Positions 3,508 to 6,759 of a DNA stretch of 64,000 nt are shown piece by piece. Each line of letters opens with the position of its first letter. Positions within the stretch are counted from its first letter, which is position 1. The notes under the pieces were generated by a model. The model ran no database searches. It had not been told where the DNA came from and was given only the letters and a program-made list of their open reading frames with translations. The translations under genes and the position numbers were made by a program. The stretch is from Haliotis cracherodii (lineage: Eukaryota): the NCBI RefSeq assembly GCF_022045235.1, contig NW_027266284.1:4154001-4218000 (forward strand). Direction: 5' to 3'.

Positions 3508-6116
3508 GAATACAACAAGCATAAGGCTCTTGATACTTTGAGTAATTCACAATACTGTATCATCTCTAACTAAGAATTGACTTTCACTTTGTGTGAGTTC
3601 ATTGGACTATGCACCTTCATAAAGTGAGGGTCAAACTGTATGATGTCAGCGCTTGCTGTCAGTCTAGACACAGATCGAGTCAATACTACGGAAGTTTGGA
3701 TGTGCATTTCTTTGATTTGTTCACTTGGATGGGTGGTAGCGAGGATATTCTTGAACAGGCATTTGGTCAAGCTCTCTGTCTTATCACAATGAATGCTAAT
3801 TAAAACACTAAGTTCAAGATTAAAGATCTAAATGACCAGAAACAATGCTTGTGTCTGAATTCATCACAAGGGAATTCCCAGGGTTTCCACAGGGATGTGG
3901 AAGCAGTCTGTAAGTGTTTACAGTATTTCAAGAGTACAGTCTCATGAAAAGACATGTGAAAAGTGTTGTTCATACGCTTTGGTTATGAACGTCAGTTACA
4001 CAGTCATGTGACTAGCCTATCATCCAATGGAAAAGCCTATATCATGTTACTGCAAATTAAACAATTTTTCCAATGTAGATCGAAAAATATGTGTGTATAG
4101 CTGCTTTGGCCATTTTCAATCCACATGCAAAATGTCTTTTGAAGATCTACAAAGTTTCACAAAACAATGGCTTCACATTAATAGACTCCAATCTCGAATT
4201 ATCCAGTGTAATACATCTCCATTCTAATTATGATAATACCCTGGAACCATTCTCAACCACAGCTTCCTCTCAGATGTGGCGTCACCTTCACCATCTCTCT
4301 TATTCTTACCCCGGACATAGCACAGAATTTCTCTCACTCATGTAATCTGAGTAATTTGATTGATCTGCCATATTTAGCACTGTGTAATGGAAATATGGTC
4401 CAAAATAAAGCTACGGTAGCAAATGGATCCAGGGAATGTATCATAATAGAATAATGACATGATACACTGCATAACCAAGGATGAATGTCCTCATATCAAG
4501 CTCAAATCTTCAAGATGAAAAGCAAACATATGATCAACTGTGTCAACCAACCTTCCTGGGCCTTGAGGCCATTGAAGGCAGATTTTGATGATCATCAATA
4601 GTATCACAAATCAGTTTGGAAGCAGCAGTTGGCTGAGATAGCATGTTTATGACAGTAAAAGACCACCAAACCCGCCCAGAAGACCCTCCCTGGAATATGC
4701 TGCTCTTTGTTTGTCCAGCTGCTCATCGCCACCCTTGGACTACCATTGTTTGTTTGCAAGCAGGGATTATTTTAGTAACTAAATAACGATCATCTGGGGA
4801 GGAATTATTTGTGGATACTTGGGTGTTGAAATACGGGATGAAGACTGCAAGAAAAACTAATATTTTTACAAGTGTTTCCTGTCTGGGGATCACTTGGGTT
4901 GAAAATAGACGGAAGAACTTTTTTATGAGGTGATATAGATTTTTATCTGGCATATTTACACATGATAAGATTTATAGATGTAAAGAGAGCCATCTAATGG
5001 CTGCACACGCTTACACACGGGAGGATATGGTTGAGGGGCATTTGATGCCAATGTGCTGTTGGGATAACAGCACATCGGTATAGGATTGTCTCATATCTGC
5101 TGATGTTATTTCAAGATTACAGATAGGGTCCTGAAGAAGTAAACAGACAGAATACTGTTTTCCTCACAACATGCCCCAGGTAGGAGGACATGAGTACCTG
5201 TTATGGACTTTGATAAAATGCCAGCCTGACCCTGTAGGAATAGCATAAAAATTTCCTTTTTCTGTTAATTAGAACAGCCCTTACAAATCATATTTCTAGA
5301 AACGGCAATATCAGAATATGAGTTTTTTCCATGTGAATAATTTCTGAGACGAATGACAATGATGATACCACATGAGTGTATCCCATATGGATCTGCCATC
5401 ATCATCAACCTCGCCCTGTATCAAACGGTTCAGTGCAGATTAGGAGAGAACTTTCAAAAATATCATTTTACATGAAAGCATAATGCTGCAATGAGAGCCA
5501 GCAAGGGTCAGTTACAGGGATGGATATTGCCAACAGGCCCACTGCTCCCTGTAGGGGGAGGCCTGGAATGAACCATGGAAGGGCCAGACAGGCCCCTGAG
5601 AGATGGACTAGGAATTAAGTACTTTTCACTTAGGAATATCTGCAAAAGAGACTAAATACAAAGCCTTCTGACTAACGTTTTATCATGTTAACAATAATCC
5701 TACTGCATATAAGTAAAACAAATGAATTTTCAAATTAATAGTGACAATTTCAACGACAGGTCATAGTGAAACATTTGCAAGATGTCAACAGCATGGATAA
5801 AACAAATGCCACTGCTTGCGCATGTGCAGAATTGGTCTTCTGGTAATACATGATGCACCCTTAATATTTTAATTGATGCATGATGTACATGATTGATGTT
5901 GCCCTAGAAACATTCATATATGTCTAATGACAATTAGGAACAGTTCTTGGTTTGCCATTATCAACTATCCTTGAAGTCTTGAAGCCAAAAGGGAAACACG
6001 TCATGTTGATCATTTACCTTTCTGTTTCTCTTGAAGAGATACGTGGACATGCTGTTATTAATTCTAGCAGACAAAAGTCAGAGGTAAGTCCCGAACTAGT
6101 TCCACAGGTGCTGAAT

Positions 6117-6502
6117 TAGTCTGTCTTACAGACCCTGATACAAATATATATCAAATACAGCCCATGCAAGTCTATAATGTTTGGCAAGTCTAGATTGCAG
6201 CAGAATCAGATTTGATACTTACTGCCATCTAAACTGACCCCCTGCTGGTAGGGTGTGTGTTTGGGGAGATGTGGGGCAATAAATTTTCCTGTCACACACA
6301 CTTTCAATGGTATGCCAGTGATGGGTGATAGGATCCTTTACACTTGTCGTAAAATTCCAAGAAATTATAGCTCTGCAGATTTGTTTAGTCTCTGAAAATG
6401 AAGAGAGTCACAGGGCTCCCTTTTATTATATTTTTATTAAGATAACTAAACAACTGTTTTTTCTGTATGATATGTTCATTTCAGACACTAGATGTTAGTC
6501 TA
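6117..6502 (-). mobile_element. Non-autonomous Academ(H)-like DNA transposon, long form (386 bp) with an internal exon-like cassette
   Basis: Termini TAG...CTA. Perfect 9-bp TSD GTGCTGAAT at 6108-6116 and 6503-6511. The first 79 nt are identical to the reverse complement of the end of the 19353-19543 copy. Superfamily call rests on TAG/CTA ends plus 9-bp TSD. Confidence 0.85.
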
Positions 6503-6759
6503 GTGCTGAATCAAGGGCTCAGTGGATGGGTTACATTCTGCCATCATCTAATAATGCCATGGCATCTACACTGGAATTCTGTTGCAGTAGTTGTATGTCT
6601 GCAGTCAGCAGTATAAAAAGTTCAGATTTTGGGACAACTTTTCATTTCTTTAGGTTTGGGTGATCCATTAAACAAAAACGGCATCGCTTTACGATGAAAA
6701 TAGCAACAGTCGATGGACTGGAAACATAATCATAGACGTATGACAACATTGTCACTCAC

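What the first reader, a model, noticed from the sequence alone, without database searches (positions are those of the whole stretch)
6108..6511. DNA transposon delivering a ready-made splice cassette into a GALNT intron (mobile exon / candidate poison exon)
Seen: a 386-bp TAG...CTA element with a perfect 9-bp TSD lies about 260 bp downstream of the GALNT exon donor. Relative to its 191-bp sister at 19353, it has an extra 194 bp (6211-6404). On the minus strand, which is the GALNT sense strand, this reads ttcattttcAG | 169 nt (6391-6223) | GTAAGTat, so it has a pyrimidine tract, acceptor and consensus donor. The cassette is stop-free only in phase 1 (ETKQICRAIISWNFTTSVKDPITHHWHTIESVCDRKIYCPTSPQTHTLPAGGQFRW), which is the phase in which the GALNT exon ends. 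Because 169 is not a multiple of 3, inclusion would shift the downstream frame. Known: AcademH elements have TAG..CTA ends and 9-10-bp TSDs. Inference: a non-autonomous family carries an intact exon (a relic of its own gene or a captured host exon), and each sense insertion could add an alternative or NMD-triggering exon.
Basis: partly seen in the sequence, partly recalled or inferred. Interest (0 to 1): 0.75.

Follow-up and report, generated by a model that had tools for sequence, protein, structure and literature searches.

The report
Transposon remnant with unused exon-like motif
A 386-bp leftover of a helicase-carrying DNA transposon sits in an intron of a sugar-transferase (GALNT) gene, and its exon-like stretch is the transposon's own untranslated leader, which the assembled host transcripts we could examine skip.

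Summary
A 386-bp TAG..CTA element (6117-6502) with a perfect 9-bp duplication lies 258 bp downstream of a real GALNT exon (6760-6923, minus strand). On the gene's sense strand it reads ttcattttcAG | 169 nt | GTAAGT and is open only in the phase the exon leaves.

The interpretation mostly fails.
- **Origin of the "extra" DNA.** It is ancestral, not added. The element is a one-off internal-deletion derivative of a ~1.2-kb element. That element in turn derives from an 8,210-bp autonomous-like copy encoding a helicase and a DUF6589 transposase-like protein (AcademH-type, 9-10-bp duplications).
- **Nature of the cassette.** In the parent it is the untranslated leader between the right terminus and the transposase ATG. 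It is neither a coding exon nor a captured one.
- **Length and copy number.** Its 169-nt length is private to this copy; 15 of the 20 other measured copies are 179-180 nt. The GT is missing in 9 of 22 copies. Cassette-bearing copies number in the dozens, against at least 1,537 candidate short forms.
- **Transcripts.** In 3 of 3 RNA-like runs the GALNT exon is spliced at both ends, and no listed contig joins it to the cassette. Rare NMD-sensitive inclusion is untested.

This is ordinary: a new member of a known kind. First readers noted two other AcademH-type elements elsewhere in this genome.

The parts
6108..6116 (.). left copy of the 9-bp target-site duplication GTGCTGAAT
   Evidence: identical to 6503-6511
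6117..6502 (-). 386-bp non-autonomous AcademH-type element (TAG..CTA). The strand given is that of the parent's transposase gene, which is also the GALNT sense strand.
   Evidence: Its deletion junction is unique in the genome.
6117..6209 (.). left-end module (element positions 1-93). It is shared with the short MITE, the 1.2-kb form and the 8.2-kb form.
6210..6502 (-). right-end module (element positions 94-386). It corresponds to about the last 293 bp of the autonomous-like copy: the right terminus plus the leader upstream of the transposase ATG.
   Evidence: About 20 places in the genome match 94-386 at 73-91%.
6223..6391 (-). 169-nt exon-like segment (pseudo-exon). Only offset 2 is open, and it has no ATG in that frame.
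   Evidence: It has private 4-bp and 6-bp deletions relative to other copies.
6392..6393 (-). AG of the acceptor-like site, preceded by ctcttcatttt
   Evidence: The AG dinucleotide is present in 22 of 22 aligned copies.
6217..6222 (-). GTAAGT donor-like hexamer, 7 nt from the deletion junction
   Evidence: GT is present in 13 of 22 aligned copies and absent in 9.
6503..6511 (.). right copy of the target-site duplication
6760..6923 (-). GALNT (polypeptide GalNAc-transferase-like) exon of 164 nt, ending in phase 1, with donor GTGAGT at 6759-6754
   Evidence: RNA-like contigs of X1, X2 and X10 lie on 6759-6925.
19353..19543 (+). 191-bp short (MITE) form of the same family in the opposite orientation. 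It lacks the cassette.
   Evidence: The genome search gave 1,537 first-look candidates; the 40 scored are 94-99% identical.

Best explanation
The element is a dead-end internal-deletion derivative of an AcademH-type cut-and-paste transposon. It keeps 93 bp of the left end and 293 bp of the right end. It would be moved in trans by the transposase and helicase of an autonomous copy such as the 8,210-bp one on contig C34, and insertion makes a 9-10-bp duplication.

The retained right-end piece is the parent's leader. It is the stretch between the right terminus and the transposase start codon, on the transposase strand. The element happens to lie with that strand in the GALNT sense direction.

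The AG and GTAAGT motifs are part of this non-coding leader. Together with a low-stop frame they mimic an exon, making an intronic pseudo-exon. The GALNT splicing machinery skips it in the predominant transcripts, joining exon 6760-6923 to the next exon about 7.4 kb downstream.

Shown: the element's anatomy, its parentage, its copy numbers, and exon splicing without the cassette in assembled contigs. Inferred: mobilisation in trans, the leader or promoter role, and neutrality of the insertion.
For: - **Boundaries and duplication.**
- **Derivation series.** In 14 loci the 1-93 part and the right-end part are separated by extra internal DNA, giving elements of 490-1,229 bp. In C34 they lie 8.2 kb apart.
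- **Independent insertions.** Duplications are CAAGTCTCT, GGCGGTCTG and a 10-bp one, and CTGTAATAA, AAAGTACGG and TCG(T/G)TTCAC.
- **Coding capacity of the C34 copy.** It has DEAD (E 8e-19) and Helicase_C (E 2e-14) ORFs on one strand and an 836-aa DUF6589 ORF (E 5e-32) on the other.
- **Family definition.** AcademH is defined by 9-10-bp duplications and a helicase (passage in PMC10045372).
- **Position of the cassette in the parent.** On the transposase strand of C34 the order is: terminus, 88 nt, AG, cassette, GTAAGT, 75 nt, ATG MAKQLDLSK.., donor, about 740-nt intron, DUF6589 ORF.
- **No coding signal.** The cassette peptide has no Pfam match at E<=1.
- **RNA-like contigs.** X1 (189 nt), X10 (417 nt) and X2 (1,237 nt, 0 differences) each lie on 6759-6925 only. 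The single extra matched letter at 6759 (G) fits the next exon, which starts GCAAC, and not the cassette, which starts AGACT.
- **Runs behave as RNA.** They have zero depth in the 8 unique intron bins 4501-6100, while the DNA run X19 has about 35 there.
- **No splicing at the donor in one long-form contig.** X1 record 5 comes from another long copy and runs through the GTAAGT without splicing.
Against: - All runs laid were assembled contigs, which drop rare isoforms. An NMD-degraded inclusion isoform would be rare by nature.
- Only 15 of 175 joints and 32 of about 9,500 pieces were printed, so a weak 6760>6391 joint could be hidden.
- The runs are RNA only by guess.
- The sequence continuing from each exon contig was not shown, so its join to the next exon rests on one letter.
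- The intron half of the donor (GTAAGT) is a perfect consensus and the acceptor tract is good.
- The link between DUF6589 and the Academ transposase is not shown by any search.
Confidence: 0.8

Rival explanations
1. Low-level poison exon. The cassette is occasionally spliced into GALNT mRNA, shifts the frame and leads to NMD, so it is invisible in assembled contigs.
For: - The AG with its pyrimidine tract and the GTAAGT are intact in this copy, and the frame entering from the exon is open.
- Contigs cannot show absence (tool text).
Against: - In 3 of 3 RNA-like runs the exon contig stops at the exon ends. The next matched letter fits the canonical next exon and not the cassette.
- No RNA-only joint at 6391 or 6223 appears among the 15 printed. 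Joints near 6387-6396 also stand in the DNA run, so they are short DNA forms.
- Pseudo-exons of this quality are common: 30 and 63 pairs in 64 kb.
- The donor's exon side is GCA.
Confidence: 0.08
2. Genuine 5'-UTR exon of the transposase gene. In the autonomous element the GTAAGT is a working donor of a short leader intron. Deletion derivatives would then carry a functional donor, though not an evolved acceptor.
For: - The segment is on the transposase strand, upstream of the ATG.
- GT is kept in 13 of 22 copies, including the autonomous-like one.
- The gene does use a CAGA|GTAAGT donor further down.
Against: - Only 75 nt separate the GT from the ATG, and no good acceptor was seen there by eye.
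- The one RNA-like contig that covers the GT (X1 record 5) runs through it, though it may be DNA.
- 9 of 22 copies have GAAAGT or CAAGT instead.
- There is no donor upstream of the AG, which lies about 88 nt from the terminus.
Confidence: 0.15
3. Captured host exon. The 169-180-nt segment was picked up from a host gene and is spread by the transposon.
For: It has exon-like motifs and an open frame.
Against: - The same segment sits at the same subterminal place in the autonomous-like copy, outside any ORF.
- It has no Pfam match.
- Of the 40 places scored with the cassette alone, the about 24 that cover it nearly in full at 86-90% coincide with family copies found. The flanks of the roughly 80% partial hits were not inspected.
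- The open frame holds no start codon, and 8 of 21 copies have a stop in it.
Confidence: 0.02

Closest known systems
AcademH lineage of the Academ superfamily of DNA transposons (Kojima 2020, Mobile DNA 11:15; known to me only through a passage in PMC10045372 and reference lists, as the paper itself is not held)
   Same: 9-10-bp target-site duplications. The autonomous-like copy encodes an SF2 helicase (DEAD plus Helicase_C) beside a large transposase-like protein. It occurs in an animal genome.
   Different: - The transposase-like ORF was matched only to Pfam DUF6589. No call ties that family to Academ.
- The claimed TAG..CTA termini of AcademH could not be checked in print.
- The copy in the window is a 386-bp non-coding remnant.
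MITEs and internal-deletion derivatives of cut-and-paste transposons
   Same: It has both termini of the autonomous element, no ORF and an intact duplication. The short 191-200-bp form is highly amplified (1,537 first-look candidates).
   Different: - The 386-bp form itself is single-copy.
- All derivative forms examined share the same left breakpoint (position 93) with different right breakpoints. That is not the usual random pattern.
Exonised transposable elements and poison exons (for example Alu exonisation; recalled, no paper read here)
   Same: A sense-strand acceptor-like and donor-like pair inside an intronic repeat. The length is not a multiple of 3, giving an early stop in the next exon.
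   Different: No splice junction using either site was seen. The defining feature, use by the spliceosome, is not met in the data available.
Intronic pseudo-exons (recalled general knowledge)
   Same: Good-looking splice motifs at exon-like spacing that are ignored by the splicing machinery. They are common: 93 simple pairs in this 64-kb window.
   Different: None of note. Here the motifs come from a transposon leader rather than from unique intron sequence.

Membership tests
AcademH (Academ superfamily) | 9- or 10-bp target-site duplication | tested here: met
   Seven insertions: the window copy has 9 bp; L002 has 9, L005 has 9 and L006 has 9-10; L047 has 9, L048 has 9 and L049 has 9 with one mismatch. 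The definition comes from a PMC10045372 passage.
AcademH (Academ superfamily) | autonomous copies encode a helicase | tested here: met
   L047 ORFs match PF00270 DEAD (E 8e-19) and PF00271 Helicase_C (E 2e-14). The helicase region carries an internal duplication, so it may not be intact.
AcademH (Academ superfamily) | Academ-type DDE (RNase H-like) transposase | tested here: inconclusive
   The 836-aa ORF matches PF20231 DUF6589 (E 5e-32) and mollusc DUF6589 clusters. No call links DUF6589 to Academ. In 2017 Academ had no Pfam model (PMC5751038 passage). Catalytic residues were not examined.
   TAG..CTA is seen in the window copy and in L002, L005, L047, L048 and L049. The describing paper is not held.
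Non-autonomous deletion derivative / MITE | shares both ends with an autonomous element and lacks its genes | tested here: met
   Positions 1-93 and 94-386 match the two ends of L047. There is no ORF with a Pfam match.
Non-autonomous deletion derivative / MITE | amplified to many copies | tested here: not met
   For the 386-bp form, its junction occurs once. Of 4 hits at up to 3 mismatches, one is the window copy itself, one is an undeleted long copy and two are at chance level with a control count of 1. The feature is met only by the short form.
Exonised TE / poison exon | spliced RNA using the acceptor and the donor | tested here: not met
   Contigs of 3 of 3 RNA-like runs cover exon 6759-6925 without the cassette, and no such joint is among the 15 printed of 175. 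This is contig-level only, so rare isoforms are untested.
Exonised TE / poison exon | inclusion disrupts the reading frame | tested here: met
   169 nt is not a multiple of 3. In the shifted frame the next exon has TGA as its third full codon (next exon read alone).
Exonised TE / poison exon | transcript level rises when NMD is blocked | not testable with these tools
   No such data set was reachable.
GALNT (polypeptide N-acetylgalactosaminyltransferase) host gene | GT-A catalytic domain exon, transcribed and spliced | tested here: met
   PF00535 positions 1-43. 59-65% identity to two intronless paralogues, with the next two exons in order downstream. RNA-like contigs cover the exon in 3 runs. 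Upstream exons and the lectin domain were not located.

The most novel reading that the evidence does not exclude
The leaders of AcademH-type elements carry a working splice donor. Combined with a fortuitous acceptor, sense-oriented long-form insertions would then act as exon traps. In that case the GALNT copy yields a rare frame-shifted, NMD-degraded isoform that assembled contigs cannot show.
Probability: 0.07. Interest if true: 0.4.

Novelty: new member of a known kind. Interest (0 to 1): 0.15.

Why it matters
As it stands this matters little. It is an ordinary intronic transposon remnant whose splice-like motifs are unused in the assembled transcripts examined.

It is useful as a worked example. 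The "extra" DNA in a longer copy is the ancestral state, and exon-likeness read from sequence alone is weak evidence. The work also documents an AcademH-type family with a single autonomous-like copy and a very successful short derivative.

If rare inclusion were shown, it would be one more case of transposon-borne poison exons, a known phenomenon.

Tried and rejected
- **Captured host exon.** Rejected. The segment sits at the same subterminal place in the autonomous-like copy, outside any ORF, and has no Pfam match.
- **MULE/MuDR.** Considered because of its 9-11-bp duplications (recalled). Set aside because the parent encodes a helicase plus a DUF6589 protein and no MULE domain was reported.
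- **The 386-bp form as an amplifying family.** Rejected. Its junction is unique.
- **Upstream GALNT exons.** tblastn and a motif search found none in the window, so the upstream part of the gene is unmapped.
- **Kojima 2020.** Not held, by DOI or by PMC id. What I say of AcademH rests on one passage of PMC10045372, on passages of PMC10799480, PMC8290104, PMC9587614 and PMC5751038, and on search listings.
- **DUF6589 in print.** One paper holds the word. I saw only its listing and it appears unrelated. I therefore cannot say whether the DUF6589-Academ link is published.
- **Orientation bias in introns.** Sense depletion of cassette-bearing copies was not tested, because no gene annotation is available.
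- **Presence or absence across individuals.** Only one DNA run was laid. Its contigs reach 30 and 27 letters into the element from the two flanks, just under the tool's 31-letter rule. The insertion therefore seems present there but is not formally bridged.
- **Supplements.** None were opened.
- **Joined exon model.** None was made or searched. The early-stop statement comes from translating the next exon alone.
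Full report
**What is in the sequence**

- The element runs from 6117 to 6502 (386 bp). It starts TAGTCTG and ends TTAGTCTA, and is flanked by a perfect direct repeat GTGCTGAAT at 6108-6116 and 6503-6511.
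- On the minus strand it reads ctcttcattttcAG, then 169 nt (6391-6223), then GTAAGT (6222-6217).
- Only the frame at offset 2 has no stop.

**The host gene**

- The neighbouring exon is real GALNT sequence. Pfam Glycos_transf_2 positions 1-43 match window 6749-6886 on the minus strand (E 2.5e-6).
- Two intronless paralogues of the same genome match it at 59-65% amino-acid identity.
- From the sequence its bounds are 6760-6923 (164 nt), and it ends AAG G|GTGAGT, in phase 1.
- The next two exons lie outside the window, about 7.4 kb and 16 kb further down the gene. The first begins ttttcag|GCAAC and encodes NIDELLTTFQQWPKVSLIRTVGRQGLVRARLLG.

**How much could be chance**

- A given frame of a 169-nt stretch is open in 3.7% of shuffles and in 3.5% of 9,119 windows of this strand. 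Any frame is open in about 10%.
- A simple screen used these criteria: a pyrimidine-rich tract plus AG, 50-300 nt, then GTRAGT. It finds 30 pairs on the plus strand and 63 on the minus strand of the window, 13 of them with an open frame. It finds one pair, the candidate, in the 6.76 kb of this intron that the window holds.
- The donor's exon side is GCA, not the usual MAG.

**What the element derives from**

- The whole-genome search with the 386 bp scored 40 of 2,352 first-look candidates. Only the window copy covers 1-386 in one piece. About 20 places match positions 94-386 alone at 73-91%.
- In 14 of the fetched loci the 1-93 part and the right-end part are separated by extra internal DNA, giving elements of 490 to 1,229 bp. 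L002 and L005 have their own 9-bp duplications and L006 a 9-10-bp one.
- Searching with the 1,195-bp form (40 of 2,070 candidates scored) showed copies whose two halves lie further apart, up to 8.2 kb on contig C34.
- The C34 copy (L047 497-8706, 8,210 bp) has the duplication CTGTAATAA. Two intermediate forms have AAAGTACGG and TCG(T/G)TTCAC.
- The C34 copy encodes, on one strand, ORFs matching DEAD (E 8e-19) and Helicase_C (E 2e-14). On the other strand it has an 836-aa ORF matching DUF6589 (E 5e-32).
- A language-model look-up places that ORF among mollusc DUF6589 clusters.
- A protein search of the genome found no second copy above 60% identity, scoring 54 of 182 candidates.
- A passage in PMC10045372 states that AcademH makes 9- or 10-bp duplications and encodes a helicase, while AcademX makes 3-4 bp.
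- I could not tie DUF6589 to Academ or check the termini in print. The describing paper is not held.

**What the cassette is in the parent**

Read on the transposase strand of the C34 copy, the order is:
1. the right terminus, then 88 nt;
2. the AG, the cassette and the GTAAGT;
3. 75 nt, then ATG MAKQLDLSK..., a first coding exon with cysteine pairs;
4. a CAGA|GTAAGT donor and an intron of about 740 nt;
5. the DUF6589 ORF.

- The cassette is thus the leader upstream of the start codon. It has no ATG in its open frame and no donor upstream of its AG. A stop separates it from the transposase frame if it is left unspliced.
- Its peptide has no Pfam match at E<=1.
The 191-bp sister is simply the more deleted form.

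**Conservation among copies (22 aligned rows)**

- The AG is present in all 22.
- A GT at the donor place is present in 13 and absent in 9. All 9 belong to a subfamily embedded in a larger repeat.
- The window copy has private deletions of 4 and 6 bp. Of the 20 other copies measured, 15 have a segment of 179-180 nt; the other five are 167, 178, 182, 185 and 199 nt (lengths minus the one extra letter the script included).
- The offset-2 frame is open in 13 of 21 copies and has one stop in 8 (L010 was dropped because an anchor motif failed).
- The copies are kin, so this is not independent support for coding.

**Copy numbers**

- The cassette alone gave 76 first-look candidates; 40 were scored and all matched.
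- The short form gave 1,537 candidates; the 40 scored were all full length at 94-99%.
- In the DNA run X19 the element's ends have a summed depth near 4x10^5 against about 35 for unique sequence. The one listed contig over the cassette has depth 239.
- The deletion junction of the 386-bp form occurs once in the genome. Of 4 hits at up to 3 mismatches, one is the window copy itself, one is an undeleted long copy and two are at chance level, with a control count of 1.
- So the form in the window never amplified. It may have transposed once, or it may have been cut down in place after a longer copy inserted.

**Transcripts**

- The run search listed 24 runs, none on record as RNA. Eighteen were guessed to be RNA, holding 0.14-0.22 of the words.
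- I laid X1, X2 and X10 (RNA-like) and X19 (DNA-sized) on window 3501-9500 at 88% likeness.
- The three RNA-like runs have zero depth in the eight unique intron bins 4501-6100, where X19 has about 35. They therefore behave as RNA.
- Each has one contig lying on 6759-6925 and nowhere else in the listed pieces: 189 nt with 7 differences, 417 nt with 4, and 1,237 nt with none.
- The exon is thus transcribed and spliced at both ends in 3 of 3 runs.
- The alignment runs one letter (G) past the exon end. That fits the next exon (GCAAC) and not the cassette (AGACT).
- No joint from 6760 to 6391 is among the 15 joints printed of 175. The joints near 6387-6396 also stand in the DNA run, so they are short DNA forms.
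- One RNA-like contig from another long copy (X1 record 5, carrying the 6-bp and 4-bp insertions) runs through the GTAAGT without splicing.
- Limits: these are contigs, most rows were not printed, and a rare NMD-degraded isoform would not be assembled.

**If the cassette were included**

- The 169 nt would shift the frame.
- Read alone in the shifted frame, the next exon has TGA as its third full codon (frame 2).
- I made no joined model.

**Age of the insertion**

- X19's contigs run from the left flank 30 letters into the element, and from 27 letters inside it out through the right flank and the exon. The flanks differ by about 3%.
- This suggests the insertion is shared with that organism, though both spans fall just short of the tool's 31-letter rule.
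- The copy is about 90% identical to other long copies.

**Verdict**

- The mobile-exon reading is not supported. The segment is the transposon's own non-coding leader, its exon-like length and frame are private accidents of one non-amplified copy, and the assembled host transcripts examined skip it.
- Two first-reader notes elsewhere in this genome describe AcademH-type elements. I did not test them.

Noticed in passing
element position 93 (window 6209/6210); L020, L023, L027, L028; window 19353-19543: All six deletion derivatives aligned (the window copy, the sister and four loci) break at the same left point, after ..TATCAG. Their right breakpoints differ: element positions 94, about 174, 175, 193, 207 and about 289. 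The long forms read on as GGTCTGTACAAATC. This points either to serial descent from one founder or to a hotspot (one search shows more such forms).
   Followed up: partly
G000:C12:46065390-46218162: A tandem array of DUF6589-like fragments (amino acids about 407-461 and 572-765 of the query) with open frames of about 280-396 aa. Several consecutive units are spaced about 5.15 kb apart, and more than 25 units are visible. It could be an amplified or domesticated transposase-derived gene.
   Followed up: no
L007, L008, L012-L014, L017-L019, L025: Nine copies of the ~1.2-kb form share identical flanks (ttcactgaaggaatt.. / ..gttcagggaccgcgc) and have lost the first TAG. The element appears to have been carried along inside a larger repeated unit. 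These copies also lack the GT of the donor-like site.
   Followed up: partly
L047 3081-4636: The helicase region of the autonomous-like copy holds two ORFs that begin with the same ~60 residues (MSSDKNKAPFRPAYGQ..). This is an internal duplication, so the helicase gene may be damaged.
   Followed up: no
G000, many contigs (for example C67:33.5-34.1 Mb, C9, C13, C5, C16): The Glycos_transf_2 search gave 90 matches, including clusters of GALNT-like exons and several intronless full-length copies (open frames of 575-600 aa). This indicates a large GALNT expansion with apparent retrocopies.
   Followed up: no
G000:C21:4338387-4341441 (about 120 kb beyond the window's end, same contig): A second, different DUF6589-type element or gene with 48-60% amino-acid identity to the C34 ORF, split by introns. 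Near-identical hit rows occur on C34:55842050-55845104.
   Followed up: no
window 6940-6979: A (GTGA)n microsatellite lies about 17 nt from the acceptor of the GALNT exon. Read laying skipped it as a repeat.
   Followed up: no
window 19250-19650: The short sister element sits inside a tandem array of ~40-bp units (..cctcaacagggca.gttg.tgtataggtgtttc.cctcaccct..). Its duplication is imperfect (ctcaccctc / ttcaccctc).
   Followed up: no
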